Source: Macrostomum hystrix
Taxonomy: Eukaryota > Animalia > Platyhelminthes
Reading direction: 5' to 3'
Assembly: GCA_950097015.1 (NCBI GenBank)
Contig: CATNEN010000035.1
Location: 806,001-870,000, forward strand
DNA: 64,000 nt
Shown here in pieces: positions 1,419 through 45,263 of the stretch (position 1 is its first letter; the number at the start of each line of letters is the position of its first letter). The notes under the pieces are model-generated. The model was not told the origin of the DNA and made no database searches. It saw only the letters and a list, made by a program, of their open reading frames with translations. The position numbers and the translations under genes were made by a program.

Positions 1419-2883
<1,465 letters not shown>

Positions 2884-9519: not shown

Positions 9520-11548
9520 CGCATCTTCGAATACATCTTCATCATCTTGATGTACTTTCTGCTCTTTGAGAATTCCCAGATCAGTCTGACAGCTTCGATG
9601 CTTCAATGAGCTTCTGCTAGTCAACTGTTTTGCTGGCATCTCTTTCTAAATCACACGACCACCGCGGACATCAGTGCCGGTTTCCTCGATTCCTTCAGGT
9701 GGTGGGATCAGTCCTAACTGGCTATCTGGTAAGCTCACCTTTGGTTCACTTTCTCTCAATTCTAATTCAGAGTCCATTTTACGGTCAATTTGTGTTGGCT
9801 TTGTACTATCAGTCTCAGCAGTTCGTCGGTATAGACTGTCAGCGTTGCTGTGCTTGCTGCCCGAATGTCATACTAGAACTCGCTTAGCCGCTCAATACAA
9901 CAACCAAGGATTCCTTGTGCTTCAGTCTGGCATAGAAGCCATAGGATCGCCTTGTGATCAGTGCAGGGTAGAAACCACTTGCCAAGAGATAAAATCGGAA
10001 GTGCTTCATCCCATCAACCAATGCTAGCAATTCTTTTTTGGTGATTGGATATCTCTTTTCGGAGTCTTTCATAGCTCGGCTAAAGTACGCGATTGGCCTT
10101 TCAATGCCATCAGATTGTATCTGTCCAAGACAGGCGCCGATTCTATCTATTGTCGCTAGCATCAATGTCTAGGACCATTCGTACTTTTTCATTCTCAGAA
10201 AACTCTGGATAGGCAAGTACTTTAGTGGACATTAGCTTATTGCTTTAACAGTTCAAATGACTTAGTATGTACTTTAGTCCATTTTTCCTTGAAATTCAGC
10301 ACTCCCTTCTTAGTTAATTGAAATAACGGGTGTGCGGCATCAGCATAATTCTTAACAAATCAGCAATAGTAATTGCACAATCCAAGGAAGCTTCTTAATT
10401 CTTTAACATCCTTAGGCACTGGCTATGTTCTAATAGCTTCAATCTTCGCCGGGTCTGTTCTTATTCCATTGACTCCGACTACATGTCCTAAGTACTTTAA
10501 TTCTTGCTGAAATAAATTGCACTTTTTAGGTCTTAGTTTCAATCCAGCTGTTATTAATCTTTGGAATACTTCCTTTAGATGACTGAGATGTTCTTCAAAA
10601 GTCTTAGAGTAAGTCACTATGTTGTCAATGTAAGACATGGCAAACTTATGCTAAATGCCAGTTAAAACTAGATTCATCAATCTTTGAAATGTACCGGGGC
10701 GCATTAGATAGTCCCTGCGCCATGACTTGATATTCAAATTGGCCTCTTGTTAACGTGGAAAATTCTGTCATGTACTTATGTTCCTCATTTATGGGAACTT
10801 GCCAATAACCGGAATTAAGGTCAAGGCTGCTGAAGTACTTCTGAAGGCTAAAGGCTTCTGGTTAGGTGTGAGAATGTCTCCTGGATGTTCAGTAGAGGAT
10901 ATGGATAATAATTCACTCTTGAGTTTAGAACTAAAAAATCACTGACAATTCTGATAGTTCCATCCTTCTTAGGTACGATGACCAATGGTGTTGAATAGGT
11001 ACTATAGCTTGGTCTTATCAAATTCTTAGCAAGCATGTCATCTAATCATACATGCGCAACCTCCCAAATCTTAGCCGGCCGTGCGACTTAGTTTTTGCTC
11101 TCATTTGCGACTTAGTTTGTTTCATTGCTCTATTTACGACTTAGTTTGCTCTCATTTGCTCTCTTTTTCTCTCCCCTTTTTCCTTTTCTTCACGCCTTCC
11201 TTTTTTGTCCCTTGGTCCCCCCTTTGATTTTTTTGCGCTTGGTTGATTGGTTTTTGCGACTTACCTTGCTTGGCCCTCGTTTCACCCGGCCGGTTCGGCT
11301 GGGTCGGCCGGGTGTTGCGCATGTATGCATCTAATTGATCATCCACTTGCTTTTGCAAAAGCGGCGGAATCCGTCTGGTAGGAATCCGAACCGGTGTGGT
11401 GTCTTTCAATGAAATTTCGTGGGTCACCAAGTGGGTCAGACCCATTTCCTGACTGGTCTGAGAGAATGCTTCTCTGTGTTCTTTCACCAGCTCAATAACT
11501 TTGTCTTTCTGTTTGTCAGTCATATTTTCTCCTAGATTGATCTCAGTG
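9520..11548 (-). mobile_element. Old Ty3/gypsy pol relic: RT, RNase H, integrase mostly deleted
   Basis: The RT start reads HEISLKDTTPVRIPTRRIP...LIRPSYSTYSTPLVIVPKKDGTIR, the RT core YIDNIVTYSKTFEEHL...LGHVV, and RNase H IAYFSRAMKDSEKRYPITKKELLAL. Multiple stops and frameshifts. Confidence 0.92.
11047..11327. mobile_element. 281-bp MITE with 14-bp TIRs and 8-bp TSD (hAT-type)
   Basis: TIRs CATACATGCGCAAC and GTTGCGCATGTATG, with TSD CATCTAAT at 11039-11046 and 11328-11335. Removing it restores the gypsy frame VDDQLDDMLAKNLIRPS. Confidence 0.92.
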
Positions 11549-13892
11549 TGATGTGGAGTGTACTTCGGAATCGAGTGGGGTTGTGAGCCAGCCTAATTTT
11601 TTTTCAATTTTTAGCAAGTCAATAATCGCGACCCACATAGCAGCTGGCCGCAGAACACCATCATTAATCTTAGGGCCAGACTTGGGGCGGAGGTGAATTA
11701 AGTAGCCGCCGATTCCCTTTGTCTCGGATCTGTCTAGTCCCCTGTAGGAGTGACTGATCGCGGAAATAGCAATACTGTATGGACTAGTTTAGGTTATAAT
11801 TCCCCTCCAAACCGCGATCAGATTGTCGGGATCACTCATGCGTTTAGAGTGAGCTTTAATTCTTCATGTCCCTCTTCTTTACTGTAACCCGAGCCGAAGC
11901 TCGATTATGACCTTTCCCCCTTTAGATACATGTAACGACACTATAGGCAGGTCGGCGCCTGCGCTTCCCATATCCCGGCGGGATCACAATCATTGGCCGA
12001 CTGCCGGAAGACGCTCCTAGTGGGGCATCTGGCGATTCTCGCCGCCGCTTCAGTGGGCAATTGGGGTGGCATTATGCCGACCCGATTCCTCGCTGACAGG
12101 CCGGCGAGCATGTGGGTTATTTTGATGAATGCGAGGTTGGCGGAGCTGCAGGACTATTTAAGAGAGCGCGCTGCGCTGCCCCTAGGAGGACCGACCTACC
12201 TTCGGACCTACCTTCCCCCGAACCTACTTTCCCGCCCCTACAACCTTTTTCCCTTGTCCAGTCCCGGAACTCGGTCCGTGGACTCTCCCCCTTCTAGGCT
12301 AGCACCTAGTCCCTGAGCCTAAGGCTCCAGATCATAGCAGCAGGCAACTACCTGCTAGTGCCCTTAAGCGCAAGCCACTTCTTTAGGTGCGCTCCAAATT
12401 GAGCCTTGAGCTCCCTGCAGTCTGGCCCCTTGCCAACTGTACTCAGCAATCCCTCACCTTTTCTCCCGTTCATTTGCATTCCCCCGCGAGATCGACGGCC
12501 TGCAGCCTGTCAACCAGCGTAGTCAGATAAGTAACCCGCGCAGCGGACTTTTATTGCTATCCCTAAGGGATTTACTATTTAGCTAGTGGGTAATAAGGGC
12601 AAGGGCAGGGATTTGATTTAGCCTAATAAAACTATTAACTCACAGCTTATCTAACTTGTTGGGCAACTTAATAACAACTTAAATCCTTTTTACTATGCAT
12701 TCCACTTTCTCTTATTTTATCGTTAGACAGCCCTCAACCATGAGTGGCTAATTCACTAGGGGAATGGGCTCTGGCGAGGCCGAGCTGAAAGCTGCGGCAA
12801 GAAGGCTACTGTGAGCGCGCATGAAAGTAATAAGGAGCTAGGGATTTGCGAGTAATATGCGGAGCGTAGCATGTGTTTCTCTGCCAGGGGTGGGGGAATT
12901 CCTTGGCGGGTTTTTCCTCTCTTTCTGGCAGATCAAGGAGTGCGTGTCAACCTCCCTTGTCAATTAATGTTTCCCTTCTGTTCCCCGCCTCTCGCTGCCG
13001 CCGCCATGGGAGCGAGGGGTGTGATCTAATAATCACCGCTTGCATAATCACTCAGCCAGTGTTCTGCTCAATCTCTCCTGCCTCTGATTTCCTCATCTCA
13101 CACAGATTCGGATTTGCTAGTTATTTAATGTGTAGGCTGCAATCTAATGTAAGGAATGTGTCTAATGTCTCATGAGTAGGATTCTGGCTATGGATTTCTC
13201 ATTCGGGTTCGGAGTACCACCTTTCTAGACCACTGTAGCGCAGTTTCAGGAATCCCCTTGTGAGGCGTGACTCGATCCATTCTGGGGTTCTCACCCTAGT
13301 CTAAAACGGAAGTTACAGAATGCTCTATTTTTCGGCTTGTCTAAGATCTGTGTGACAAACTGGGAGCCGCGAGCTCCGGGGACCCAAGTTCCCAAATGTC
13401 TGCGGTGGCAACGTAGGCGCATTGGGTGGTGGCGCTACCTTCGATCATTATCCGCTTTGCCGATAGCCTTTCCGCATTTCTAAGACAAGAGCCTAGGCCG
13501 AGTCGACCACTGCTACCAAAGTTAGGAGTCAGTTACGAACATGCTACTGATGACAGTAGGCTATCTAGCCCTGTCCTATTCGCTTGCGGGTAGTCCGACA
13601 TCTATTTAGACTTTTAGCCGGTTTCGAGCACTGCTTGGGGTGGGCACGGCAGTCATGCCTGTGGCCTATGGGTTGGGTGGGACTGGCCAGCCTGAGGCCA
13701 ATAGGACCACTCACTTGCATCCTTTGTACCGCCTCATCTCTCCCTTCATCTCTCCCTTCATCCCTCCCTTCGTCATCCCTCTCTGCGACAACTCGCGGCA
13801 GCAGCGATCGACCTCCGACTCTATCGTCGTTTTCCACACTCCTATCTTTCATGAGGGCGGTCATCGGCTAGCAAAAGACCCGCACTATTTCA
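11549..13892 (+). repeat. 5' LTR (2344 bp)
   Basis: Starts TGATGTGG and ends TTTCA. Contains TATTTAAG at about 12155 and AATAAA at about 12625, both retained in the diverged solo LTR. Confidence 0.96.
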
Positions 13893-13893
13893 A

Positions 13894-13915
13894 TGGTGGC
13901 ATCGAGGTGGGATTT
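13894..13915 (+). other. Primer-binding site, imperfect tRNA-Leu-like
   Basis: TGGTGGCATCGAGGTGGGATTT lies 1 nt after the LTR. It resembles the Leu-type TGGTGGCAGCGGTGGGATT with 2 extra nt. Confidence 0.65.
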
Positions 13916-15226
13916 AGAAAGGGCGCGAAACGAACTTGAATTTCAATTGTTAGTTTAGCGCCGCAGATTTCTGTGGTAGCTAGCCGTAAGGGCTTCTTCT
14001 AGATTTCATCTTCCGTACGCCTAAATCTTATCTCTAGAGACTGGACTTCAGTTCGAGTAACCGTCAAATTAATTTTCCGAACAGTTACAATTTGTTTTCA
14101 ATTTAATTTAGGCTTTTGTTAGAGTTTCCAAAATTTCTGATTAGTGACTTTCTACTAAGAGTAGGCTGTGTGAGCGGACTTCATGCTAGAGTGTCTTCGG
14201 GTTATGTGGCTGCTGCAGGAGTCAGGGACTGTCTGTGGGGTTTCCCGCGTGACTGTTCTGGGAGGGGCCAATCTTAACGAAGGACCGGGCCATGCCGGTC
14301 AGGCCTCCTAACCGAGCGAAGTGAGCCCCCGGCAATGCAGCCGGGAACCGATGACTCGCTGAGCACCGGGGGTTGGTTCTCTTGGGCAGCTTGTAGGCCT
14401 GCTTACGTGTACCTGATTCTGAAAGTGTCACATAGCTTTGATCAAGTCTGACTTTGGTGGGGGACAGTTAGGGAGGCGGGACCTTCTGGGAGGTCTAGCG
14501 ACCCCCGTGCCCGCCTCTCGAAGCTGCCTACTTTAAGTATGGGCTAGAATTCGGTCGGCGCGTCTTTCTAAGAAACTCTCTGAGGGATGGTCTAAACGGA
14601 GAAACCGGGCTCTAAGCCACGGGCCCCTAACCGAGCGAGGTCTCAGATGTATAATTCCTGGGATCCCCAGCCTCGTAATCGCGGAGGCGAAGCCCCCGGC
14701 CATCCCAACCGGGAAGGGCCCTCTGAGCGAATCGGGGATTAGCCTTCTTTGAATGACTTTTTGAGTCGCGTGCTTTCCAAGGTAGGGAGATAGGCTGCTG
14801 CAGGCGCAAGCTTGCAGTAGTACTGGCCCCGCCGTACCTATAGTGTAACAGTCTGCTATAGGGTTGCTGAATGAGTGCTAGGTTAAAACCTAGACTTCTA
14901 CGAGCGTATGTCCCAAACTTAAGTGCGCGCAAGCAGTTGTCGGTAGCCAAGGCTGGAAGCAAAGCTAGCCAGGGCCCTGGGCCCTTTTCTCTCTCATTGA
15001 TCTTTGATCTCACTTTTGCTGTAGGATTGTTTGCTAGGAATAAGGAATTTGCTCGCGTCATTAATTAGGGCTGGATTTGACAACTCAGGCCATTCTCTCT
15101 CCCTCTCGCACGACCCCCGGTCGTGATCTGTGTTCCCTTTTCTTCTCCTTTTCCCCCATTGTTGCATTAGCGACAGACCCCCCCTCTTTTTCATTCGCAA
15201 AATCCTCATTCCTCTTTTGGCCGAAA

Positions 15227-16285
15227 ATGTCCGACCAGGAGGGTGAGGTGGTGGAAGTGGTTGGAGTCAACCGCCCACCCAGAGGCCGCGCCGCAGCTGC
15301 GGCGCGCGCCGAACCCCCAGCGGCTGCTGCAGCACAGCAAGCCGACCCTATGGAGCGCCTAGCGCTGCTTTTGGAGCGGCTAGAGGTGCGACGACCCCGG
15401 AACCACCGGGTCAAAGTTGCTATTGAACCCCTCGAATCCCGAAAGGATTCCTTCCCCCTCTGGCTTCGCCGATTTAACCTGAAGCTGGAGGCGGAGGGTG
15501 TCGAATCCGAGGAGGAGAAAATCCTCACCCTCCTCGCTCACCTGAGTGGCGAGCCCCTCACCGAAGCGCTAGGGTTGCCCCGCCGGGTGACCTACCTTAG
15601 ATTCGTGCAGGATCTGACCGAGGCCCTGAGTGGCGCCTGCACCCCCTACGCCCGGCTGCTGAGCGGGCGTAATTTGAAGCAAGGACGGGACGAGACGTAC
15701 CCCGCCTTCGCCGATAGACTCAGAACAGCGGCCCTGCAGGCCACCCCCAATGGCCACGGTGTGCACTTCGAGCGCGCTTTGCTGGCCTCTTTTATGGAGG
15801 GGATAGTGGCCCCACCCGAGGTGTTGGCACCCATCATGCGGATGGAATTTGCCACGGCTGAGGCCGCCGCCGCCGAGCTGCGTGCTGCCACGCAGGCGCA
15901 TGAAATGGCGGTGGAGCGGGACCCTCGCCGGCGAGTGCGCCAAATCAGGACAGGTTCAGATGACGAACCGGACCAGCCAGAGCCGCAGCACGGGCTGCTG
16001 GCAGAATTAACCAAGGTGACCCAGCAGCTAGCCGAGATTTCTCAGCAGCTGCGGGAAGCCAAGCCCAACTCCATTCCCCCTCTCTGCCCACACCCAAATG
16101 GGCATCAGTGGCACCCGAAGCGTGTAGAACACGGGGCTGCTGGCGGAGCGAATCGTGAGGTGGCGAAGGGAAATGGGAACGGGGCCGCCAATTGGAGGCA
16201 GTCCCACGGCCCCGAGACCCAGCCCGCAGCTCGACAGTCGGAGCGGCGGCAGCCGCCGCCTCCGACCTCCGAGAAGTCCGAGTGA
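15227..16285 (+). CDS. Gag (capsid-like), 352 aa, no canonical CCHC knuckle
   Basis: Uninterrupted ORF from MSDQEG. FPLWLRRFNLKLEAEG...LKQGRDETYPAFADRL resembles the retrotransposon gag domain. Confidence 0.88.
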   Translation: MSDQEGEVVEVVGVNRPPRGRAAAAARAEPPAAAAAQQADPMERLALLLERLEVRRPRNHRVKVAIEPLESRKDSFPLWLRRFNLKLEAEGVESEEEKILTLLAHLSGEPLTEALGLPRRVTYLRFVQDLTEALSGACTPYARLLSGRNLKQGRDETYPAFADRLRTAALQATPNGHGVHFERALLASFMEGIVAPPEVLAPIMRMEFATAEAAAAELRAATQAHEMAVERDPRRRVRQIRTGSDDEPDQPEPQHGLLAELTKVTQQLAEISQQLREAKPNSIPPLCPHPNGHQWHPKRVEHGAAGGANREVAKGNGNGAANWRQSHGPETQPAARQSERRQPPPPTSEKSE

Positions 16286-16716
16286 ATGCACTCGGCCGAG
16301 TCCCCACCCGAGTGCGAACCCGCCCAAATCGCTCTGAGCAGCTTAGTGAGGTGTGGGTCGCCTTGGAAGTGGAAGGGACACCCCTAGACCTCCTCATCGA
16401 CACAGGGTCTATGGTAAATGTGCTCCCGGACTCGTTGTCATCAATCTTTCAACACTACCCATTCGAACCCCCGCAATTTTCTCTTTTTGCTTATAATGGA
16501 ACACCCATTGTCGCACAGGCGCAGGTCAGGGTCAAATTACAGGTTGGCACCGAAGCGCTGGACACCGTGTTCTTAGTGGTTGAGGGCGACTGCTCTCCCC
16601 TGCTCGGTGCCTCCTGGTTGGCTCATCATCATGCCATCGTTGACTTTGACTCGCGCCACTTAATCATATATCGTCAATTTCTCCCCTTTTCACTCAGGCG
16701 GAAGGCTAAATTTTAA
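16174..16716 (+). CDS. Retropepsin aspartic protease in the -1 frame (Gag-PR fusion, ~496 aa)
   Basis: Reads LEVEGTPLDLLIDTGSMVNVL...SPLLGASWL. The frame is open from 16159 and stops at TAA 16714-16716 just after the domain. Confidence 0.88.
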   Translation, partial: WERGRQLEAVPRPRDPARSSTVGAAAAAASDLREVRVNALGRVPTRVRTRPNRSEQLSEVWVALEVEGTPLDLLIDTGSMVNVLPDSLSSIFQHYPFEPPQFSLFAYNGTPIVAQAQVRVKLQVGTEALDTVFLVVEGDCSPLLGASWLAHHHAIVDFDSRHLIIYRQFLPFSLRRKAKF

Positions 16717-16871
16717 ATTGTGAGGGTCACCGTGACCTAGGATCAATCACCATTTTCTTTCCTCGCCCACCCCACCCCCTCCTCTGGTCGTCGACTTATT
16801 TAAGTAAGGGCTGGGAAAGCCAAGCAGGAAAGTTTTATTCTAGTTTAAGAACGAAGGGACTAGTCTCAGAC

Positions 16872-17453
16872 ATGGCAAGCTTTGGCACCGTCCTGGCGTG
16901 GTGGCTAGAAGTGGCCGCCACGGATTATCGCCGCGAACTGGCAGGGAAGAGGACCTGGCTGATGGTCCGCCTGTGGCTGTTACCCATGATAGGACGAGCG
17001 GCCCAAGCAGGCGTTGACCTCGCCCTTGCCTGCCAGCTGGCAGAATCTAGGTGGCTGGCCCAGGCGTGGTGCGAAGAGCGGGACCCTCTGCCGCCTAGGG
17101 GAGAAGACGAGGCAAACCTCCCTTGGAACCTGCGGTGGATGGAGTACAGCCCGCCAGCGGATTGGAGCATTACCATACCCGATGAGCTCGCGTCCTGGCT
17201 GCAAGCCAAGAGGATCCCAGGACAGGAAGAGTTGGAGCACCAGCTGGTCATGCGCCGGATCGGGATGCCAGAGATCACCCTGCGGTCAGCGGCAGACCCG
17301 GATTGGCGTGAGTGGCTCCACGGACATCGCATCGTCGAAGAGCCACCGCCCGGGGACAGCACGCTCGGCCGCATGGTGAGAGAGATGGAAGGCGAAGAAG
17401 CTAGCGAGGGACCGGTGGAAAGTACGCCCATCAAGGAGGCGGCCGAGGAATAG
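16872..17453 (+). CDS. Orphan 193-aa Trp-rich, acidic-tailed protein located where RT-IN would be
   Basis: ATG in good context (CAGACATGG), uninterrupted ORF, and TATTTAAG about 70 nt upstream. No family recognised. Confidence 0.55.
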   Translation: MASFGTVLAWWLEVAATDYRRELAGKRTWLMVRLWLLPMIGRAAQAGVDLALACQLAESRWLAQAWCEERDPLPPRGEDEANLPWNLRWMEYSPPADWSITIPDELASWLQAKRIPGQEELEHQLVMRRIGMPEITLRSAADPDWREWLHGHRIVEEPPPGDSTLGRMVREMEGEEASEGPVESTPIKEAAEE

Positions 17454-19794
17454 GAAAGCGCAAGGTAGGGTCAACCGAGGTAGTGACCGTAGAATAGTAG
17501 GAACAGGACCACCATCTGTTAGGCCCCTGTCCCCTGTTCCCCCTTTGTCCCCTTCCTTTTTCCTCCCCCCTTTAATAATAATGCGCACTCTGCACTTTTC
17601 GCTCCTTTTCTCCTATTGTGCATGTTTTCCCTTTTCATCTAAAGCCGCCTTGGCCAAAAATCTCACACAAAAAAATTCTTATAATTTTAGCCAAAACCAC
17701 AAAAATACACATAGTGGGGTGAAATTCCCCTGATACTTTTTACATAAGATGCTTATCTAATTGTAGCAAACTAGGGTATGCACCTTCTTTTCTTAAAGAG
17801 CATTTTACTTTAATCGCACCACATCATGCATGGCACCTCTGCCTTATCTTGTTCATATTGGTGGGTCTGTGGGAGTTCAATTTAGGACAACTTCTAAATT
17901 AGGAGGGACACCAACCCGCTAAAGTGAGCGGGGTGGTATGCCATGGGAAATTCTATGTTTCTTTAAGGGAGGGAAGGCGGTTTCAAATCAAAAAGGCCAT
18001 CTCGGCGCCAAACCCTCTTAAAAACTCATATAAACTAATCAAAATCCAAAAACATACTTAGTGGGGTGAAACTCCCCTAGTACGAATTTTCGCATGAAAT
18101 ATTTTCGTAATAACTGCCGCAAACTAGGGTTCGCACCTACTTTTCGCAAACCTGCCTATCTTACATGTTCTCTATGCTTGGTTTCGGGAGTTTAGCTATA
18201 CCGGCTTCTATTTAGGGGGTATACCAACCCGCTAAAGTGAGCGGGGTGGTATGTTTCGGGAATTTTCTTCTTAATGTTTGTTTAAAGAGTGGGCGGTCGT
18301 AAATCAAGAGGCCGGTAGGATCAGGTATTCAAACTCTGGGAGGGAAAACAATCTGGCTGTTTCAATGAACGACAGATTTTAAAAATGATAACTTTTCCTT
18401 TGTTAGGATTAGAGGGGTCAGAAAAAAAAAACATTATTTGGGAGCCAGAAGTTAGCAGCTGGGCATTCAAATCTAGGTACCTGGAGGGGTAGAATAGTAA
18501 TAAATCGCATGAATTAAGGTTCCAGACGTTTCAAAACTCATTGACAGTCTATCAGTTAGTTTTTTTGGTTACTAGGCGGTTGTAAAACTTGAGCAGTAAT
18601 GTTCATCTAGGAATAGAGCGGGTAATTGCATTTCAAATAACTCACAATGTAATCTATCTATATTTGGGGGAGGGTTTGTCACAGTTCGGGTCGGGGTCAA
18701 TTCCAAATCAGTGGGACATTTCAGAGTGCCGTGGGTAAAAAGGGAATTCGATTTATCCTAACTATTATGACATAACCCTCGCAATTATCCTTAATAACCG
18801 GCCTTGGGGGGCCGAGTAGAAGCCAAATCACTCACCTCTCTCCTTCAGGCAGTTGCTCGGCCATGATCGCGGGTAGCAGTCGACAAAAATAATAATGGCA
18901 GGATAAATCCAGGAAGTTCGCTGGCAGAGATTAGCTTAGTTGATGTTTTAGATAATGTGTCGAAATAGGTTTAGAGATAACAGGCTTGGAGTCAATGGGG
19001 CGTCAAGTGTTTGCTTTTATAGGGCTAATTTAGGGAGACGTGGCGGTCTAACCGCCAGCCAATGGGAGCAAAGTGGGAATTCCGGGCAGAACCAGTTTAG
19101 GGGGCTCATGGTAACAGTTTAGTTGTTGGGGCCCTGACCTTTTCGGTGAGGAGACACCTCGGCCGGCAACAGCATCACAAGCGGCCTGAGCAGCGGTTTC
19201 CCCAGCTGCGACCAGCTGCAGCGCCGATTGGGCCGCGCGCAACGGCTAGGCAACCGGCCCGACGAGAATTTTCGGGCCCGGCCAGCTGAAAACACCTGGG
19301 CGCGCGGCGAATCAGAGGCTACCACGGCCCGGCAACGGAATCGGGAAGGCGCGAACGGACCAACCAACCCGGAGCCACCTGGGGAAGAGCACGGCCGGAC
19401 CCTCGGACTTAAGGAGAAAACGGCCGGAGCCTCCCGGGATTGCGCAACCGAGACCAAGCCGGGCAGGGAAAGACGGGGACAGCTGCAGCCACCTGGAGGA
19501 GAAGGCGAGCCGGGACACGGCACCCCTGGGCAACGAGAACAACTTTAACTCAGCCGGAATGCGCACCCACCTCCCCTCAGGACTCTATCCCTTAGTCGCT
19601 AGGGGCGCCGACCTTTACACTCTCGCACACAATCTATTTATAGCAGTATTGTTACGTACGATGACCTAGGATTTCTTCTCTAGCGGATTTCTTCTTAAGG
19701 TTCTTTACGGTATACAGTAGGGTAATGTAAGTTTTTGCCCCCTCGATTCGCGGCACACCCCACTACTGACAGTAAGCACGTAAGTGCCTTACGT

Positions 19795-19814
19795 GAAAGT
19801 GAGCGAAGGTGGAG
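19795..19814 (+). other. Polypurine tract
   Basis: GAAAGTGAGCGAAGGTGGAG directly abuts the 3' LTR. Confidence 0.75.
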
Positions 19815-22158
19815 TGATGTGGAGTGTACTTCGGAATCGAGTGGGGTTGTGAGCCAGCCTAATTTTTTTTCAATTTTTAGCAAGTCAATAATCGCGACCC
19901 ACATAGCAGCTGGCCGCAGAACACCATCATTAATCTTAGGGCCAGACTTGGGGCGGAGGTGAATTAAGTAGCCGCCGATTCCCTTTGTCTCGGATCTGTC
20001 TAGTCCCCTGTAGGAGTGACTGATCGCGGAAATAGCAATACTGTATGGACTAGTTTAGGTTATAATTCCCCTCCAAACCGCGATCAGATTGTCGGGATCA
20101 CTCATGCGTTTAGAGTGAGCTTTAATTCTTCATGTCCCTCTTCTTTACTGTAACCCGAGCCGAAGCTCGATTATGACCTTTCCCCCTTTAGATACATGTA
20201 ACGACACTATAGGCAGGTCGGCGCCTGCGCTTCCCATATCCCGGCGGGATCACAATCATTGGCCGACTGCCGGAAGACGCTCCTAGTGGGGCATCTGGCG
20301 ATTCTCGCCGCCGCTTCAGTGGGCAATTGGGGTGGCATTATGCCGACCCGATTCCTCGCTGACAGGCCGGCGAGCATGTGGGTTATTTTGATGAATGCGA
20401 GGTTGGCGGAGCTGCAGGACTATTTAAGAGAGCGCGCTGCGCTGCCCCTAGGAGGACCGACCTACCTTCGGACCTACCTTCCCCCGAACCTACTTTCCCG
20501 CCCCTACAACCTTTTTCCCTTGTCCGGTCCCGGAACTCGGTCCGTGGACTCTCCCCCTTCTAGGCTAGCACCTAGTCCCTGAGCCTAAGGCTCCAGATCA
20601 TAGCAGCAGGCAACTACCTGCTAGTGCCCTTAAGCGCAAGCCACTTCTTTAGGTGCGCTCCAAATTGAGCCTTGAGCTCCCTGCAGTCTGGCCCCTTGCC
20701 AACTGTACTCAGCAATCCCTCACCTTTTCTCCCGTTCATTTGCATTCCCCCGCGAGATCGACGGCCTGCAGCCTGTCAACCAGCGTAGTCAGATAAGTAA
20801 CCCGCGCAGCGGACTTTTATTGCTATCCCTAAGGGATTTACTATTTAGCTAGTGGGTAATAAGGGCAAGGGCAGGGATTTGATTTAGCCTAATAAAACTA
20901 TTAACTCACAGCTTATCTAACTTGTTGGGCAACTTAATAACAACTTAAATCCTTTTTACTATGCATTCCACTTTCTCTTATTTTATCGTTAGACAGCCCT
21001 CAACCATGAGTGGCTAATTCACTAGGGGAATGGGCTCTGGCGAGGCCGAGCTGAAAGCTGCGGCAAGAAGGCTACTGTGAGCGCGCATGAAAGTAATAAG
21101 GAGCTAGGGATTTGCGAGTAATATGCGGAGCGTAGCATGTGTTTCTCTGCCAGGGGTGGGGGAATTCCTTGGCGGGTTTTTCCTCTCTTTCTGGCAGATC
21201 AAGGAGTGCGTGTCAACCTCCCTTGTCAATTAATGTTTCCCTTCTGTTCCCCGCCTCTCGCTGCCGCCGCCATGGGAGCGAGGGGTGTGATCTAATAATC
21301 ACCGCTTGCATAATCACTCAGCCAGTGTTCTGCTCAATCTCTCCTGCCTCTGATTTCCTCATCTCACACAGATTCGGATTTGCTAGTTATTTAATGTGTA
21401 GGCTGCAATCTAATGTAAGGAATGTGTCTAATGTCTCATGAGTAGGATTCTGGCTATGGATTTCTCATTCGGGTTCGGAGTACCACCTTTCTAGACCACT
21501 GTAGCGCAGTTTCAGGAATCCCCTTGTGAGGCGTGACTCGATCCATTCTGGGGTTCTCACCCTAGTCTAAAACGGAAGTTACAGAATGCTCTATTTTTCG
21601 GCTTGTCTAAGATCTGTGTGACAAACTGGGAGCCGCGAGCTCCGGGGACCCAAGTTCCCAAATGTCTGCGGTGGCAACGTAGGCGCATTGGGTGGTGGCG
21701 CTACCTTCGATCATTATCCGCTTTGCCGATAGCCTTTCCGCATTTCTAAGACAAGAGCCTAGGCCGAGTCGACCACTGCTACCAAAGTTAGGAGTCAGTT
21801 ACGAACATGCTACTGATGACAGTAGGCTATCTAGCCCTGTCCTATTCGCTTGCGGGTAGTCCGACATCTATTTAGACTTTTAGCCGGTTTCGAGCACTGC
21901 TTGGGGTGGGCACGGCAGTCATGCCTGTGGCCTATGGGTTGGGTGGGACTGGCCAGCCTGAGGCCAATAGGACCACTCACTTGCATCCTTTGTACCGCCT
22001 CATCTCTCCCTTCATCTCTCCCTTCATCCCTCCCTTCGTCATCCCTCTCTGCGACAACTCGCGGCAGCAGCGATCGACCTCCGACTCTATCGTCGTTTTC
22101 CACACTCCTATCTTTCATGAGGGCGGTCATCGGCTAGCAAAAGACCCGCACTATTTCA
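19815..22158 (+). repeat. 3' LTR (2344 bp), near-identical to the 5' LTR
   Basis: Same ORF pattern at offset 8266. One substitution was spotted (A12260 versus G20526). Confidence 0.96.
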
Positions 22159-23365
22159 AGTGATCTAATCTTCTTGGCTCAATTGCTCGAATTTCGCAGT
22201 CTTCACATGTCCACTGGGTTTGACTTTTTCTGCTTGTTCTTGCTCGGCATAGTAAGTTTTGTCTTTAGCTTGCAATGGCTTGGCAAATCCGATAATCGTA
22301 GATTCTTCCCTTCTAGGAATTCTTCCCTACACACAAAACTTTTAGCTGCCATATAGTGCCTTATTTGGGGGTTCAATAGTGCCAAATTCAGTCTAAGATT
22401 AGTGCCAAAATTTGGAACTATATAAGGCACTATCAAGGCACTATGTGCCAAAATCTGGCACTACTTGGGTGCCATATAGTGCCAAAATAATGCGCCAACT
22501 TAAGCCAAAATCTGGCACTGCTCGGGTGCCATATCGTGCCAAAATCTGACACTAGTCCAGTGCCATTTAGTGCCAAATTTGAATCCCATTTAAATCAATA
22601 TGCTTTTTGTACAGGTAAAAAATGAATTAAGAAGACAATAATTCAAATTTATTCCACTCCACAGTTTGCTTAAGTCTTTATATCAAAAATATGTTTTTTA
22701 AAGAAAAGCAATAATATAATGCTGAGGTGCTTATTTAGGCAATTTTTATTTGGGAGCTAAATTAATAATATTAATGCACCACTTAGTCATAAAAAAGTGT
22801 AATGTCTATATTTTAACAGAAAAGCAAGAAATGCATTCACTTTTTCAAAAAGATTGCACCAATTACCAATTGTGGGCATAAAATACATTTTAGGCAGCAA
22901 AAAAGGCAAACCAGCAAGCTCAATGAGCTGTGGAGGCAACTTTTTGGCATTGAAAGTCCCAAAACTGGTACCCTACAAATTGTGGTTGATATGTCAATTC
23001 AGACAGCTAATGCCATCATCATATGAGGAACATATATTGCACAATGAGGACCTTCAAAATAACATTAAGTTAATTATTAAAATTTCAGTTGCTAAAAGTA
23101 GTTCACAAAATGCAATAAAATTATTATAAATATTAGACAATAAAGAAAACTAAAAAATTATCAGGAATAATTTTAAATGTTTTTATAATTGAATGTCAGT
23201 TCAATATCAAATTATTCGACTAAAAGTATGACAGAGTATTTAAACCAGGCCAACTGTACTAAACTAATTTCTATATTATTTTCATTGAAATTGATTCTTT
23301 TGCCCCTTCATATTTAATCAATTAACTCCACCTGAGTTGAGTGAAATAATTGGTGAAAAATATAG

Positions 23366-24859: not shown

Positions 24860-26039
24860 TTCTTACTAACTGGCTACAAATAACTCTTACTTAAAATCTA
24901 ATTGGCCACTACAGCATGGTCTTAGTATTTTTTCTATTAGATTTAAAATATTATTTTATAGCTAAATAGAAAAACTCTATTTAAAATTAGAAATTTTAAA
25001 ACTTTGAAAGAACATAATTAAGGCAGAAAAATTGTGATCCACACATAAAAATTGGTTGAATTGAAGGATGGAAAAATTTAACATCATCAATATGCCTACA
25101 CTCTGAATTGACTTCAAAATTAATAATTTTATAAGAATTGAAGTTTGGAACCCAGATTACATTAACTTTTGAACACAAAAAACCCACTTGTTATTAAGGC
25201 TTAAGATATGCTTTACTTTAATAAAAGAATAATCAAACTCCAAAGAATGATACTTGCATATTAAAATACTGCCAGGCTTATAATCAGAACCAAAAAAAGA
25301 AAGGCTACTTACAGAGAAAATGTTAGATGGCATATTAGGTAAAAACAACATTAGGCTTCTTTATCTTCAGAAGAAAGGAAGCTTAAATTGAATTCCATGT
25401 AATCCTTCCAAGAAAAAAAAATTGCCAGCATGAAAATTTGCATTATTAATACATTGATGTTCAGCATAAAATTTACTAAGAGAAAATCCAAATGCAATAG
25501 AGAATAATGCAAAAAGTGCATTATGGGAAAAAATATTTTCTTGAATAGTGCTCAAAAAAGATAAATCAGGGGAAGGTGAAAATGAATATTGAATAATTTC
25601 AACATGTAGTAACAATAAGCTCCAAATTTCATCCTCATTGGAAGCAAATGAGCTAAAAAACAAAGGCATATTAACAGCAAGATAATAAATATGTGCAGCT
25701 TTCTGTCGCAGGCCTCTGTCTATGTTCTTACTAAACTCCACTTCCAATAATGCCAATCCAACTGCTGTTACCAAAGTTGTTATAGGGCTAACTTAATTAT
25801 ATTGCTGTCACCAAAGTTGTTGTAGGGCTATTTAATAATCTCACTGTCTGTCACTAATAAAGTCCTAATAATGCACCAAAGTTGTTTTAGGCTTCTTTTA
25901 TTCAAGTAATATCTTATGTCAATCTTATTATTGTCTTTACTTTTATTCGCTTTACGCACTTTCTTATTTCAATTCAAATTGGTAGCGTTTTATGTATTCA
26001 AATAGGATAGCATTATACTTTCAATATGGTAGCGTTATA

Positions 26040-27820
26040 CGAGGGCTGTCCCAAAAGTAGTGTTACTTTTGATTATATCTTTTGTTCTGATGGTTCAAAT
26101 AACGTGATTTTACACAGTCTTATAGCGGCAAGTCTCTTCTTTATATTAATTCAAATCTTTTTTTCTAACAGACTAGGGAAATAGAAGTTATCAACGAAAA
26201 ACTAACAGGACCTCAAACATAGACTTACAGTAAATCAACAAGCAAGCAAAAATGACCAACAGTTGAGTGGTTGCGAATATGAAGTTTTCTCGTAGCAATT
26301 GAAACGCTCCTCTGCACTCGTCGGTGGGAATGCTTGACTTCTCAACGTAGTCACCGCCGAGCTGAAGGCATTTTTGCCACCGACTGAACAAACCGTCAAT
26401 AGCGTTGGCATAACTCTCGCGTGGAATTTTGTGGAGCAGGACATTCCGCACTGCCTGTTCGAGGTTGTCACGGTTCTCATGAACTTTACCTCGCAGATGC
26501 GACTTCATTAGTGGAAATAAGGCGAAATCTGCTGGCGCCAGATCAGGCGAATACGGTGGATGAGGCAAAATATTAAACTTGAGTCTGCTGACAGCCTCGG
26601 AGGTCTTCTGTGCAGTATGGGGTCTGGCGTTGTCGTGGTGGAGAAGAAAGGGCTTGATTCCAACCCGACGCTTGTTCCAGATTTCGAACTTCAATTTTTC
26701 AAGGGAAGCAATATAGCACTCGGCATTGATGCTCTTCCCTGGCTCAAGAAATTCGATTGTAAGTGGTCCATTTCTGTCTAAGAACAAAGTCAGAAGCACC
26801 TTTTTGCAGTGAGGCTCTCAACGTGCCTTAACAGGGGGGTCTGAACCCCTGATTGTCCAAACCTTGGACTCCTGTTTGGTGGGGGGATCGAAGTGAGGCA
26901 CCCACGTCTCGTCACCAGTAACAACGATTTGCCGAAACGTTTCCCATCCACCATGTTGCCTGACGAGCTCCAGATTCTCCTGGCACACTCGCTGCCGCTG
27001 CTCTTTCAGGTCTGGTGTCAGAAGGCGTGGAATCCAGCGAGCACTCCGCTTCACATAATCCATGCTGGTGAGACTTCGATGAACCGTTGATCGCGGAGTA
27101 TTTAGCCTGTCAGCAATCTCTCTGATCGTCATTCGTGCGTCCTCATCAAGAAGATCCAGGATAGCGTCAGCCAGGACGTCAGAGTCTCGAACATGAGGGC
27201 GACCTGTCCTGAGCTGATCAGCAAGGTCCGTCCTTCCCGCTCGAAACTGTTCTATCCAACAATAGATGGTCATTTTACTGACCGCGCAAGACCCATGAGC
27301 TGATGAAAGTTGCCCATGAATCTCGGCTGCACTGTGCCCCGTCTTCCAAAGGGTGTAAATCACACTCCTCTGGGCAAAACTTGAATGCACATCCATGATC
27401 TTTAGCACAGCAAGAAATGAGAACAAAAATGCTCGTACTGAAGCCAAGTCCCAGTGAGAGATATGAAGATTTCATTCCATCTTTTCCAGAGACAACTTTC
27501 AAATTATAACTTCATTATGATTTTTTCAGAGACATATCTTTGTCGCAGATTGAGAAATTCAGAAATTTTGGTTGAAAGAGTGACCTCAGTCGAAAGCACT
27601 TTCGTAGCATTCCGATAGCTTGTTGATTTACTGTAAGTCTATGTTTGAGGTCCTGTTAGTTTTTCGTTGATAACTTCTATTTCCCTAGTCTGTTAGAAAA
27701 AAGATTTGAATTAATATAAAGAAGAGACTTGCCGCTATAAGACTGTGTCAAATCACGTTATTTGAACCATCAGAACAAAAGATATAATCAAAAGTAACAC
27801 TACTTTTGGGACAGCCCTCG
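26040..27820 (-). mobile_element. Mariner (DD34D) element with ~203-bp TIRs; transposase has one nonsense codon
   Basis: TA TSD at 26038-39 and 27821-22; TIRs at 26040-26243 and 27618-27820. Motifs WIPRLL, VTGDETW, HDNARPH and YSPDLAPAD give 34 residues between the last two Ds. ATG at 27396; in-frame TGA at 26818-26820. Confidence 0.96.
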
Positions 27821-35045: not shown

Positions 35046-35235
35046 AGTTGGCCAGGATCCAAGCGAGTATTCTGCTCATCATCGGTAATAGGCATACTCC
35101 TCGATAGTTGTTGAGGTCTCTTCTGTCGCCTTTTTTGAAGAGCGGTAATATAAGTCCAATTTTTTCTTCTTCATCCCATTTGTGCGCTCGTTGTTTGAAC
35201 ATAAGTTGTATTTGTTCAGTGCATGCTTTCTTCAC
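35046..35235 (-). mobile_element. Short LINE RT fragment fused in frame to the gypsy gag
   Basis: LILPLFKKGDRRDLNNYRGVCLL, a paralog of the motif at 35881-36348. Confidence 0.8.
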
Positions 35236-35242
35236 CTCGGAT

Positions 35243-35258
35243 CAGTGGCGTAGCTAGG
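35243..35258 (+). mobile_element. Isolated DNA-transposon TIR (hAT-like)
   Basis: CAGTGGCGTAGCTAGG marks the break in LINE homology. No partner end was found. Confidence 0.35.
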
Positions 35259-39565: not shown

Positions 39566-41855
39566 TGAAGTGGGTGCGGGTTTTGCAATCCGATGACCTG
39601 TCCTCAAGAGAGAAAGGGAGTGTGGGAATGGCGATAGAGTTAGAAGTCGTACCGCAAAGCCTCGCGATTTATCGCGGGGAGGGGGATGAAGGGAGAGACA
39701 GTGGATGCAGGGAGTGGTCCTCTCGGCCTCAGGCTGGCCAGTCCCACTCAACCCATAGGCCACAGGCATGACTGCCGTGCCTACCCCAAGCAGTGCTCGA
39801 AACCGGCTAAAGTCTAAAGAGATATCGGACTACCCGCAAGCAGGTAGGACAGGGCTAGATAGCCTACTGTCATCAGTAGCATGTACATAACTGACTCCTA
39901 ACAGTGGTAGCAGTGGTCGATTCGGCATAGGCTCTTGTCTTAGAAATGCGGAAAGGCTATTGGCAAAGCGGAAAATGATCTAGGGTAGCGCCACCACCCA
40001 ATGCGCCTACGTTGCCACCGCAGACATTTGGGAACTTGGGTCCCCGGAGTTCACAGCTCCTAGTTTGTCACACAGATCTCAGACAAGCCGAAAAATAGGG
40101 CATTCTGTAACTTCCGTTTTAGACTAGGGCGAAGACCCCAGAATGAATCGAGACACGCCTCAACAGGGGATTCCTGAAACTGCGCTACAGTGGTCTAGAG
40201 AGGTGGTACTCCGAACTCGAATGAGAAACCCATAGCCAGAATCCTACTCATGAAACATCAGGCACATTCCTTACATTAGATTGCAGCCTACACATTAAAT
40301 AACTAGCAAATCCGAATCTGTGTGAGATGAGGAAATCAGAGGCAGGAGAGATTAAGCAGAACACTGGCTGAGTGATTATGCAAGCGATAAATATTAGATC
40401 ACGCCTCTCGCTCCCATGGCCGTAGTTGCGAGGGCGGGGAATAGAAGGAGAATTCAATTGACAAAGGAGTTTGACGCGTACACTGGTATCCGCCAGTGAG
40501 AGAGGAAAGCCGGCCAAGGAATTCCCCGCCCCTAAGCAGCAATGCACACGCTACATTCCGCATTTTACTCGCAAATCCCTAGCTCCTTATTACTTTCATG
40601 CGCGCTCACAGTTGTCCTCCTGCCGCAGCTTTCAGCTAGGCATCACCAGAGCCCACCCCCTAATGAGTTAGCCACTCATGATCGAGGGCTGTCTAACGAT
40701 AAAATAAAGGTAAAAAGGAGACATAGTAAGAAGGAATTAAGTTGTTATAAAGTTAAGCCCAATAAGTTAAAAGTGCTTTAGATTAGACAGTTTATTAGGC
40801 TATCAAATTCCCTAATTTCCCTCCCTCTAATTGCCGCCTAACCTAGAGAAAGGTCCCTTAGGACTAACAATTATAAAACCGCTGCGCGGGTTACTTAGCT
40901 GGATGCTGGTTCGGCCGCGTGCTGCAATCCTGTAGCTCTCGGGGAAGGGGTAGGGCAAAACAGCAAGGCCGGGAAAGGAAACTGCTGTGAGCTGGCAGGG
41001 GCCAACACACTGGGAGCACAGTGGCTCAATTTAGAGCTCACCTAAAGAGGTGGCTTGCGATTAGGGGGGAAGGGGGCAGGCAATGGGCCTGTGAGCGCTT
41101 GCTTGAGCTTTTAGCTCTGGGGTCTAAGCCCTAAGTGGATGTGGGAAAAGTGCCTTAGGTCCGGTGGGAGTCCGGCCTGGCAATGAGATAGGTCGAGGTC
41201 CGGGGAAAGGAAAAAGGTTGTCCTAGGGGCAGCGCAGCGCGCTTCCTTAAATAGTCTTGCAGCACGCCAACCCCGACATCCATCAAAATAACCCACATTC
41301 GCGCCAGCCTGTCATCGGGGAATTGAAGCGGCGATGGCCACCCCGATTACCCAATGAACCAGCGGCGAGAAGCGACATGCTCCTTCACGAGCAGCCGCCG
41401 ACAATCGGCCAATAATTGTTACTCCGCCAGGACAATGGGAAGCGCAGGCGCCGACCTGCCTACAGTGACATTTACACGTATCTAAGAGAGGAGGTCATAA
41501 AGTCGAGCTGGGCTCGAATACTGTAAAGAAGTGGGGACATGAAGAATTAATGATCACTCATAATGCCCGAGTGATTCCCAATATCTGATCGCGGTTTGGA
41601 GGGGAATTATGACCTAAACTACTCATACAATAAAAGCTATGGCCGCGATCAGTCATTCCTACAGGGGTCTAGACAGATCCAGGGAGAAGGGATTCGACGG
41701 CTACTTAATTCACCGCCGCCCAAAACCCGGCCCTAAGATTAATGATCTTGTTTGTGGCCAGCTGCTAGGTGGGTCGCGATTATTGATTGCTTAAAAATTT
41801 GAAAAATTCCGCTGGCTCACATTCCCACTCGATTCCCGCAGCACACTCCACATCA
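39566..41855 (-). mobile_element. Solo LTR (~2290 bp) of a diverged subfamily of the 11549-22158 element
   Basis: Reverse-complement homology along the whole LTR, TG...CA ends, and a 4-bp TSD TAAT at 39562-39565 and 41856-41859. Confidence 0.93.
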
Positions 41856-45262: not shown

Positions 45263-45263
45263 T

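What the first reader, a model, noticed from the sequence alone, without database searches (positions are those of the whole stretch)
11549..22158. PEG10/TR-GAG-like LTR element: gag and protease kept, RT/RH/IN replaced by other cargo, yet freshly mobile
Seen: near-identical 2.3-kb LTRs, TSD, PBS, PPT, an intact 352-aa gag and a complete protease ending at a clean stop. No polymerase or integrase appears in 5.9 kb of internal sequence. Known: plant TR-GAG elements have this coding content, and mammalian PEG10 is a gag/-1/protease gene that forms RNA-packaging capsids. Inference: an active animal lineage that builds and matures its own capsid but borrows RT/IN in trans, carrying an orphan gene and structured RNAs. 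It is a candidate natural RNA-packaging system or an intermediate toward gag domestication.
Basis: partly seen in the sequence, partly recalled or inferred. Interest (0 to 1): 0.82.

Follow-up and report, generated by a model that had tools for sequence, protein, structure and literature searches.

The report
Young gag-protease-only LTR retrotransposon
This is a very recently inserted retrovirus-like mobile element in an animal genome that still encodes its own capsid protein and protease but no reverse transcriptase or integrase, so other elements must have copied it; the type is well known in plants and less documented in animals.

Summary
Window 11549-22158 is a complete LTR retrotransposon. 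It has two 2344-bp LTRs with one mismatch, TG..CA ends, a 4-bp target duplication (AGTG), a PBS-like site and a purine tract.

It encodes three things:
- A 352-aa Gag.
- A retropepsin in the -1 frame.
- A 193-aa orphan ORF3.

No reverse transcriptase, RNase H or integrase is detectable.

Gag is very divergent. An unrestricted HMMER search of 1.84 billion representatives gave 7 hits, the best at 30% identity. Those hits are Ty3/gypsy-type gag proteins. The closest one sits next to a PR-RT-RNaseH pol gene. The modelled Gag core matches retroviral, Arc, PNMA2 and PEG10 capsid folds. Gag has lost the CCHC zinc knuckle that its relatives have.

A G_GGA_AAT slippery site followed by a GC stem lies at the same place as G_GGA_AAC in the closest relative. 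ORF3 shows the same codon-position GC signature as gag and PR.

New context: the element is nested in a decayed gypsy pol fragment, and a 79%-identical solo LTR lies 17 kb away.

Best reading: a non-autonomous, trans-mobilised gag-PR element comparable to plant TR-GAG and GAG/PROT families.

Not shown: that it is a lineage rather than a single copy, that it is under selection, or which element supplies the missing enzymes.

The parts
11545..11548 (.). 5' copy of the target-site duplication AGTG
   Evidence: Same 4 bases at 22159-22162.
11549..13892 (+). 5' LTR, 2344 bp, TG..CA
   Evidence: 2343/2344 identical to the 3' LTR. A non-coding block at 13049-13650 is 92-96% identical to the solo LTR.
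13894..13914 (+). PBS-like site starting with TGG, one base after the LTR
   Evidence: Read from the sequence. The tRNA was not identified: no tRNA in the window, and 18-mer hits in metagenomes are not tRNA genes.
13893..15226 (+). Long non-coding leader (1.3 kb)
   Evidence: No codon periodicity. A pyrimidine tract plus AG lies before the gag ATG. Its role is inferred only.
15227..16285 (+). gag, 352 aa, capsid-like core at residues ~76-235, zinc knuckle lost
   Evidence: Deep HMMER hits to Retrotrans_gag+CCHC proteins. Alignment A4. AF2 model and Foldseek hits to MLV, Arc, PNMA2, PEG10 and Ty3 capsids. Strong codon-position GC periodicity.
16168..16174 (+). Slippery heptamer G_GGA_AAT in the gag register (-1 frameshift site)
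   Evidence: In register with the gag frame. Homologous place to G_GGA_AAC in L001. PEG10 uses GGGAAAC (PMC2800197).
16180..16214 (+). 8-bp GC stem-loop 5 nt downstream of the slippery site
   Evidence: RNA folds, z = -2.4, 5 of 200 shuffles as stable.
16174..16716 (+). Protease in the -1 frame (open from 16159), DTG at 16399-16407, stop at 16714-16716
   Evidence: Pfam gag-asp_proteas E 6e-5, below cut-off. Ddi1/ASPRV1 retropepsin alignments. 26% identity, E 7e-8, to the PR of L001 pol. Codon periodicity in this frame.
16872..17453 (+). ORF3, 193 aa, orphan
   Evidence: Codon-position GC [0.68, 0.50, 0.73] resembles gag and is confined to the ORF. An ORF this long appears in 4-5 of 500 shuffles. 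No Pfam, PDB or word-search relatives.
17671..18310 (+). Two diverged tandem units (~350 nt, 72-76% identical), each with a stable hairpin carrying a PPT-like motif (17905-17942, 18216-18257)
19795..19814 (+). Polypurine tract (17 of 20 purines) abutting the 3' LTR
   Evidence: Read from the sequence.
19815..22158 (+). 3' LTR
22159..22162 (.). 3' copy of the target-site duplication AGTG
39566..41855 (-). Solo LTR of the same LTR family, 2290 bp, 79% identical, TG..CA, own target duplication ATTA
9823..11544 (-). Context: decayed Ty3/gypsy RT-RNaseH fragment into which the young element inserted
   Evidence: tblastn with L001 pol gives 56-67% identity with several stops and frame changes. Pfam RVT_1 and RT_RNaseH. 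Weak continuation across the insertion site.

Best explanation
This is a non-autonomous ('semi-autonomous') LTR retrotransposon of Ty3/gypsy ancestry that integrated very recently.

Proposed mechanism:
1. Its LTR drives a genomic RNA.
2. Translation of that RNA gives a capsid-type Gag.
3. A -1 ribosomal frameshift at G_GGA_AAT (16168-16174), stimulated by the downstream GC stem, gives a Gag-protease fusion of about 496 aa.
4. A separate 193-aa ORF3 is probably made from a subgenomic or spliced RNA.
5. The element has no reverse transcriptase, RNase H or integrase. Enzymes of another, autonomous element in the same cell must therefore have copied its RNA, primed at the PBS-like site and the purine tract, and integrated it with a 4-bp duplication.

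Shown here:
- The anatomy of the element.
- The absence of pol domains.
- Gag and PR homology and fold.
- Positional conservation of the slippery site.
- The youth of the insertion.

Inferred, not shown:
- Frameshifting actually occurs.
- Gag forms particles.
- ORF3 is expressed.
- Mobilisation in trans.
- That the pol-less layout is an established lineage.
For: Structure and age:
- LTR pair with 1 mismatch in 2344 bp, TG..CA ends, AGTG duplication.

Gag:
- 7 hits in 1.84e9 representatives, the best at 30% identity and E 4e-12. They carry sub-threshold matches to Retrotrans_gag and/or a CCHC zinc knuckle.
- The closest hit lies next to a PR-RT-RNaseH pol gene on contig L001.
- The model core has pLDDT 80-94. 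Foldseek top hits are MLV, Arc, PNMA2, PEG10, Ty3 and dArc1 capsids.

Protease:
- DTG is present and the alignment covers the full domain.

Frameshift:
- The heptamer is in register, with a stem 5 nt downstream.
- G_GGA_AAC sits at the homologous place in L001, with the pol frame open there.

No pol:
-.

Coding periodicity:
- It occurs exactly in gag, PR and ORF3 and nowhere else in the internal region.

The cargo is older than the insertion:
- Its two tandem units are only 72-76% identical, whereas the LTRs are 99.96% identical.

Family history in this genome:
- A solo LTR with its own duplication.

Comparable elements:
- GAG/PROT-only families are described in plants (PMC13570524).
Against: - Only one full copy is visible, so conservation of the layout and selection on gag and PR are untested.
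- No partner with matching LTR ends or PBS was found.
- The only autonomous-type remnant in the window (9823-11544) is decayed. It is much closer to L001 (56-67%) than the young element's gag (30%) and PR (26%) are, so it is not an obvious helper.
- Gag lacks the CCHC knuckle present in all relatives. That could impair RNA packaging.
- Pfam matches to gag and PR are below the curated thresholds.
- Foldseek E-values are weak (best 7e-3).
- The tRNA for the PBS is unidentified.
- ORF3 has no relatives, and its expression route is a guess.
Confidence: 0.7

Rival explanations
1. One-off defective derivative. The family is mainly autonomous. This copy arose by a single recombination or template-switch event that swapped pol for foreign sequence. 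It was then packaged once by its full-length siblings, as with replication-defective transducing retroviruses. It is not a self-sustaining gag-PR lineage.
For: Only one full copy is seen. The solo LTR could belong to an autonomous sibling. PR ends about 15 codons after its domain, where homology to the relative's pol stops. Relatives found are autonomous or are followed by a pol-sized ORF.
Against: No pol remnant at all remains. The cargo has an ORF with gag-like codon signature and an internally diverged duplication, so the cargo is old, although it could have been old in a donor locus. Gag and PR are very far from every protein in a 1.84e9-representative library, so no close autonomous sibling is on record.
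Confidence: 0.2
2. Post-integration rearrangement. A full-length element inserted here and later lost pol in place by deletion or gene conversion, so the pol-less form was never mobile.
For: This cannot be excluded from a single copy.
Against: The LTRs differ at 1 of 2344 positions, which leaves very little time. About 3 kb of unrelated sequence sits where pol would be, so this is not a simple deletion. gag, PR and ORF3 are all intact.
Confidence: 0.05
3. Assembly artefact. Near-identical 2.3-kb LTRs caused an assembler to join the internal parts of different elements.
For: Long identical repeats are a known cause of misjoins (general knowledge). I had no read data.
Against: The target duplication matches on both sides, and the flanks weakly continue one decayed pol reading frame across the site. 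gag, the frameshift site and PR are contiguous and coherent.
Confidence: 0.03
4. Domesticated host gene of the PEG10 type rather than a transposon.
For: gag/-1/PR layout with a GGGAAAY slippery site.
Against: Intact, nearly identical LTRs, a target duplication, PBS and PPT, insertion inside another decayed element, and a related solo LTR nearby.
Confidence: 0.02

Closest known systems
Plant TR-GAG elements and GAG/PROT-only non-autonomous LTR families (Coffea, Arabidopsis, Triticeae, sugar beet; PMC13570524)
   Same: LTRs, PBS and PPT are present. gag, or gag plus protease, is retained. RT, RNase H and integrase are absent. These elements are regarded as semi-autonomous and mobilised in trans.
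   Different: The host here is an animal-type genome. The element is 10.6 kb with 2.3-kb LTRs. PR is reached by a -1 frameshift. An additional orphan ORF3 and 2.4 kb of non-coding cargo are present. Gag lacks the zinc knuckle. Only one copy is known.
PEG10 (mammalian Ty3/gypsy-derived gene; PMC2800197)
   Same: Gag-like RF1, a -1 frameshift at G_GGA_AAC (here G_GGA_AAT), and an aspartic protease shortly after the shift. The Gag model's C-terminal capsid domain matches the PEG10 CA C-terminal domain (7lga; TM 0.67 normalised to the target).
   Different: PEG10 has no LTRs, is a fixed single-copy host gene and keeps a CCHC finger. The window element is a recently transposed copy with LTRs and a target duplication, and it has no knuckle.
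Autonomous Ty3/gypsy-type element on Logan contig L001 (closest sequence relative found)
   Same: Gag is 30% identical over the capsid core. PR is 26% identical. The slippery heptamer sits at the same place after the knuckle region. PR lies in the -1 frame.
   Different: L001 continues into RT and RNase H and keeps the CCHC knuckle. The window element stops after PR.
Replication-defective transducing retroviruses and the maize Bs1 element (from my own knowledge, not checked here)
   Same: Pol is replaced by foreign sequence, gag is kept, and propagation depends on a helper.
   Different: ORF3 has no detectable host-gene origin. It is not fused to gag.
LTR retrotransposons with captured ORF3s in bdelloid rotifers (PMC5408684), and coding-less LTR elements with internal tandem repeats in Culex (PMC3286476)
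   Same: The extra ORF downstream of the core genes resembles the rotifer elements. The internal tandem repeats in a non-autonomous animal LTR element resemble the Culex elements.
   Different: The rotifer elements keep pol. The Culex elements have no ORFs at all.

Membership tests
LTR retrotransposon (structural definition) | Two direct long terminal repeats ending in TG..CA | tested here: met
   2344-bp LTRs, 1 mismatch, TG..CA.
LTR retrotransposon (structural definition) | Short target-site duplication flanking the element | tested here: met
   AGTG on both sides. The solo LTR has ATTA.
LTR retrotransposon (structural definition) | Primer-binding site complementary to a tRNA 3' end next to the 5' LTR | tested here: inconclusive
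   The site starts with TGG one base after the LTR. No matching tRNA gene was found: none in the window, and the 43 metagenome hits are not tRNAs.
LTR retrotransposon (structural definition) | Polypurine tract next to the 3' LTR | tested here: met
   17 of 20 purines at 19795-19814.
Ty3/gypsy (Metaviridae) | pol with PR-RT-RNaseH-IN order and RT that groups with the family | tested here: not met
   No RT, RNase H or integrase is present. The element can only be called Ty3/gypsy-derived.
Ty3/gypsy (Metaviridae) | Gag and PR homologous to those of family members | tested here: met
   The gag relatives show sub-threshold Retrotrans_gag matches and/or a CCHC knuckle. The closest is linked to a pol with RVT_1 and RT_RNaseH. 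PR is 26% identical to that pol's PR.
TR-GAG (plant terminal-repeat retrotransposons with GAG) | LTR element that keeps a GAG ORF and lacks all enzymes | tested here: not met
   A complete protease and a third ORF are present. It matches the broader 'GAG/PROT-only' category of PMC13570524 instead.
TR-GAG (plant terminal-repeat retrotransposons with GAG) | Small size and plant host | tested here: not met
   The element is 10.6 kb. The window carries an animal-type alpha-tubulin. The sugar beet GAG/PROT families likewise exceed the proposed TR-GAG size range.
TR-GAG (plant terminal-repeat retrotransposons with GAG) | Multi-copy family with conserved gag, and an autonomous partner | not testable with these tools
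   The host genome is not in any searchable collection.
PEG10-type domesticated gag-pro gene | gag, -1 frameshift at a GGGAAAY heptamer, aspartic protease | tested here: met
   Frameshifting itself was not tested.
PEG10-type domesticated gag-pro gene | No LTRs; fixed orthologous host gene | tested here: not met
   Intact LTRs and a target duplication.
LARD / TRIM (non-coding non-autonomous LTR elements) | No coding capacity | tested here: not met
   Three intact ORFs with coding periodicity.

The most novel reading that the evidence does not exclude
An established animal lineage of 'capsid-and-protease-only' retroelements.

- Gag has lost the zinc knuckle, and Gag, PR and the orphan ORF3 are kept under selection.
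- The lineage builds and matures its own particles.
- It takes RT and integrase from an unrelated autonomous Ty3/gypsy element.
- ORF3 acts as the accessory factor that makes this hijacking possible.

This would be a retroelement counterpart of satellite viruses.
Probability: 0.25. Interest if true: 0.65.

Novelty: new variant of a known kind. Interest (0 to 1): 0.42.

Why it matters
If the gag-PR-ORF3 layout is an established family, it would show that semi-autonomous LTR elements, best documented in plants, also persist in animals.

It would also provide a natural, minimal capsid-plus-protease system with a PEG10-like frameshift, from a gag lineage almost absent from sequence databases. That is relevant to two questions:
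- How gag genes become detached from pol before domestication.
- How defective elements parasitise helpers.

As it stands, this is one well-formed, very young copy. It is a good lead for a genome-wide census, not yet a demonstrated system.

Tried and rejected
Searches that found nothing:
- Word-index protein searches with gag, the PR ORF and ORF3. Their length window means longer kin of PR and ORF3 remain unsearched.
- Rfam, at gathering and at E <= 1.
- The PBS 21-mer in metagenome and viral contigs.
- A conserved LTR 30-mer, and gag, in viral contigs.

Attempts that were uninformative:
- The inferred tRNA 3' end gave 43 metagenome hits, about the chance level. None is a tRNA by ARAGORN among the 32 loci read.
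- Exact look-up of ten window ORFs showed none is in the protein collection, so the host species stays unidentified.
- The single-sequence AF2 model of Gag was poor, with pLDDT 42.
- The profile-versus-PDB search was dominated by the relatives' zinc knuckles and said nothing about the capsid.

Ideas rejected:
- ORF3 as a second -1 frameshift product continuing from PR. Its frame is open from 16710, but the overlap is 7 nt with no in-register slippery site. In addition, 16710-16871 has no codon periodicity and lower GC.
- ORF3 as a remnant of pol. It has no similarity to L001 pol.
- gag or PR of the decayed host element on the right flank. None was detected.
- A coding explanation for the conserved LTR block. 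Mismatches are not codon-periodic.
Full report
**Scope and safeguards**

I do not take the window for human, for four reasons:
- It carries alpha-tubulin residues 36-451 in a single exon.
- It has a mariner-like element with 99%-identical inverted ends.
- It has a Ty3/gypsy-type insertion whose LTRs differ at one base.
- It has short-unit satellites.

The tubulin scores highest against metazoan alpha-tubulins, so I call the host 'animal-type'. The species could not be identified, because none of ten window ORFs is in the protein collection.

One search returned 43 metagenome loci. Five of them come from human-gut metagenome assemblies (L007, L010, L016, L017, L041). I could not tell what those five are. 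I left them, and six others (L004, L009, L021, L028, L031, L037), unread and uncompared.

**1. The observation**

An ungapped comparison at offset 8266 shows identity from 11548 to 13893 with a single mismatch at 12260. With the canonical TG..CA ends, the LTRs are 11549-13892 and 19815-22158, each 2344 bp. AGTG flanks them on both sides.

One base after the 5' LTR, a 21-nt site begins with TGG. It has the look of a tRNA 3'-end complement. From memory, it resembles tRNAs whose T-arm ends in AATCCCACC. I could not verify a tRNA:
- The window has none.
- The exact 21-mer is absent from metagenome and viral contigs.
- The 18-mer of the inferred tRNA end gave 43 hits, about the number chance would give. 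ARAGORN calls none of the 32 loci I read a tRNA at that place.

A 20-nt tract with 17 purines abuts the 3' LTR. The structural observation is confirmed, with the PBS assignment left open.

**2. Coding content**

gag runs from ATG 15227 to the stop at 16285, giving 352 aa. The -1 frame is open from 16159 to the stop at 16714-16716 and contains DTG at 16399-16407. ORF3 is 16872-17453, 193 aa.

Codon-position GC content shows a strong three-base periodicity in exactly three stretches and nowhere else in the 5.9-kb internal region:

| Stretch | Amplitude | Frame of the low second position |
|---|---|---|
| gag | 0.22-0.39 | gag frame |
| PR | 0.19-0.24 | -1 frame |
| ORF3 | 0.19-0.28 | ORF3 frame |

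ORF3's profile [0.68, 0.50, 0.73] mirrors that of gag [0.74, 0.50, 0.71]. An ORF this long appears in 4-5 of 500 dinucleotide shuffles. I therefore treat ORF3 as a real or very recently real gene.

The ORF3 frame is open back to 16710 and overlaps the PR stop by 7 nt. However, there is no in-register slippery site, and 16710-16871 lacks periodicity. ORF3 is therefore not a second frameshift product.

**3. No polymerase or integrase**

All 56 stop-to-stop pieces of at least 45 aa, on both strands of 13893-19814, were scanned against Pfam. Only the weak gag and protease families appear. tblastn with the 798-aa PR-RT-RNaseH pol of the closest relative finds nothing in the element. The same query strongly detects an unrelated pol fragment just outside it (section 7), so the method works on this sequence.

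**4. What gag is**

Pfam gives only a sub-threshold Gag_p24_C match, and the word-index search gives nothing. Because the claim rests on the identity of this protein, I used the single unrestricted HMMER search.

That search returned 7 hits in 1.84 billion representatives, the best at E 4e-12 and 30% identity over nearly the full length. The hits show sub-threshold matches to the Retrotrans_gag or PNMA families, a CCHC zinc knuckle, or both. Two are from the flatworm Macrostomum lignano.

The closest cluster lies on Logan contig L001. There gag is followed, in the -1 frame, by a pol with aspartyl protease, RVT_1 and RT_RNaseH. A JGI relative is likewise followed by a 1299-aa ORF cut by the contig end.

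The 9-sequence alignment keeps a set of invariant capsid-core residues. At the knuckle position, the window protein has a short remnant without the cysteines.

With that alignment, AlphaFold2 gives a helical core with pLDDT 80-94 over residues ~150-230. Foldseek's best PDB matches are all retroelement capsids:
- MLV CA, Arc, PNMA2, Ty3 and dArc1.
- The PEG10, MOAP1, RSV and BLV CA C-terminal domains.

For the C-terminal domain matches, target-normalised TM is 0.58-0.67 at rmsd 3-4 Å. E-values are weak, the best being 7e-3. The viral library also puts a retroviral Gag first.

Conclusion: this is a genuine, very divergent Ty3/gypsy-type capsid protein that has lost its nucleocapsid knuckle.

**5. 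Protease and frameshift**

The PR ORF aligns over the whole retropepsin domain with yeast and human Ddi1 and with ASPRV1. It also aligns with the PR of L001 pol at 26% identity, E 7e-8 for that comparison. It ends about 15 codons after the domain.

Nine bases after the -1 frame opens lies G_GGA_AAT (16168-16174), in register with the gag frame. Five bases downstream, an 8-bp GC stem forms at 16180-16187 paired with 16207-16214. Its z-score is -2.4, and 5 of 200 shuffles are as stable.

In L001, G_GGA_AAC sits in the gag register at 1023-1029. That is the homologous place just after the knuckle, and the pol frame is open from there. PEG10 uses GGGAAAC (PMC2800197).

Positional conservation across 30%-identical gags is the best evidence here that the shift site is functional. 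The predicted transframe product has about 316 + 180 residues. Frameshifting itself is inferred.

**6. Cargo**

After ORF3 come 2.36 kb without coding signal. This stretch includes two tandem units of about 350 nt that are only 72-76% identical.

Each unit carries a stable hairpin, with z -3.3 and -4.0 and no shuffle as stable. The loop and 3' arm of the hairpin repeat the core of the purine tract, a 10-nt exact match plus GGTGG. No Rfam family matches.

The divergence between the units is about 25%, against 0.04% between the LTRs. The cargo sequence is therefore far older than this insertion. That fits a pol-less RNA that was copied as such. It does not exclude recent capture of an old sequence.

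**7.

(a) The element sits inside a decayed Ty3/gypsy pol.
- On the minus strand, 11544 down to 9823 encodes RT and RNase H that are 56-67% identical to L001 pol residues 295-768. Several stops and frame changes interrupt it.
- The homology runs right up to the insertion site. The minus-strand translation of the right flank weakly continues it.
- Further right, no gag or PR is detectable.
- This remnant is much closer to L001 than the young element's own gag and PR are, so it is not an evident helper.

(b) A solo LTR lies at 39566-41855 on the minus strand.
- It is 2290 bp with TG..CA ends and its own duplication ATTA, and is 79% identical to the young LTRs.
- The LTR family therefore has an older history in this genome. 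The solo LTR could stem from either a pol-less or an autonomous relative.
- One LTR block (13049-13650) is 92-96% identical between the two LTRs, while the rest is 40-85%. Its mismatches are not codon-periodic. This suggests a conserved non-coding function.

**8. Interpretation**

The best-supported reading (0.7) is a non-autonomous, Ty3/gypsy-derived gag-PR element that was reverse-transcribed and integrated by enzymes supplied in trans.

The main rival (0.2) is that it is a single defective recombinant of an otherwise autonomous family. Rearrangement in place, misassembly and a domesticated gene are each unlikely, for the reasons given in the Rival explanations section.

Comparison with known elements:
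- Plant TR-GAG: the strict definition, gag only and small, is not met.
- GAG/PROT-only families: it fits this broader class, 28 families of which were reported in sugar beet.
- PEG10: the expression logic is shared, but this is a transposon, not a host gene.
- Animals: non-autonomous LTR elements have been described mainly as coding-less (Culex). Extra ORF3s are known in autonomous rotifer elements.

I rate it a new variant of a known kind, of moderate interest. Its value depends on a genome-wide census that these tools cannot run.

Noticed in passing
window 9823-11544 (-): Decayed Ty3/gypsy RT-RNaseH fragment, 56-67% identical in protein to the pol of Logan contig L001, with several stops and frame changes. 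The young element is inserted in it. No integrase, gag or PR of this older element was detected on either side.
   Followed up: partly
window 39566-41855 (-): Solo LTR of the same LTR family: 2290 bp, 79% identical, TG..CA ends, target duplication ATTA.
   Followed up: yes
window 13049-13650 (and 21315-21916): A ~600-bp block of the LTR is 92-96% identical to the solo LTR, while the rest is 40-85%. Mismatches are not codon-periodic, so this is probably a conserved regulatory or leader region.
   Followed up: partly
window 17905-17942 and 18216-18257: Stable hairpins (z -3.3 and -4.0), one in each unit of a diverged tandem duplication. Each repeats the core motif of the 3' polypurine tract. They may be duplicated or internal PPT-like sites.
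   Followed up: partly
L001 1023-1029: The closest autonomous relative has G_GGA_AAC in the gag register, with the pol frame open from there. -1 frameshifting at this spot therefore looks ancestral to the lineage.
   Followed up: yes
window 14537, 15095-15172, 16751-16868: A GTATG/GTAAG motif occurs in the leader and before ORF3. Long pyrimidine tracts followed by AG lie upstream of the gag and ORF3 start codons. These are possible splice signals for subgenomic RNAs.
   Followed up: no
window 26038-27822: Mariner/Tc1-like DNA transposon with 206-bp terminal inverted repeats 99% identical. The transposase (HTH plus DDE) is split into two ORFs on the minus strand.
   Followed up: partly
window 1633-2883 (+): Alpha-tubulin residues 36-451 in one uninterrupted exon, scoring highest against metazoan alpha-tubulins. 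A 462-aa antisense ORF overlaps it and is probably a by-product of composition.
   Followed up: partly
window 60419-62287, 45263-45802, 44624-45263: A 23-bp satellite (81 copies) with an inverted, 86%-identical array 15 kb away, next to an 18-bp satellite (36 copies).
   Followed up: no
window 34438-37991 (-): ORFs of a non-LTR retrotransposon (endonuclease-RT family match) in a stretch with extreme strand asymmetry (AT skew -0.51 at 36-38 kb).
   Followed up: no
window 51337-51504 and 52853-53020: A 168-bp inverted repeat, 98% identical, encloses about 1.3 kb that includes a 204-aa ORF. This is possibly another small DNA transposon.
   Followed up: no
window 62628-63926 (-): A 432-aa ORF with an RNase H domain in a GC-rich stretch at the window end, beside a GCT-repeat tract.
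   Followed up: no
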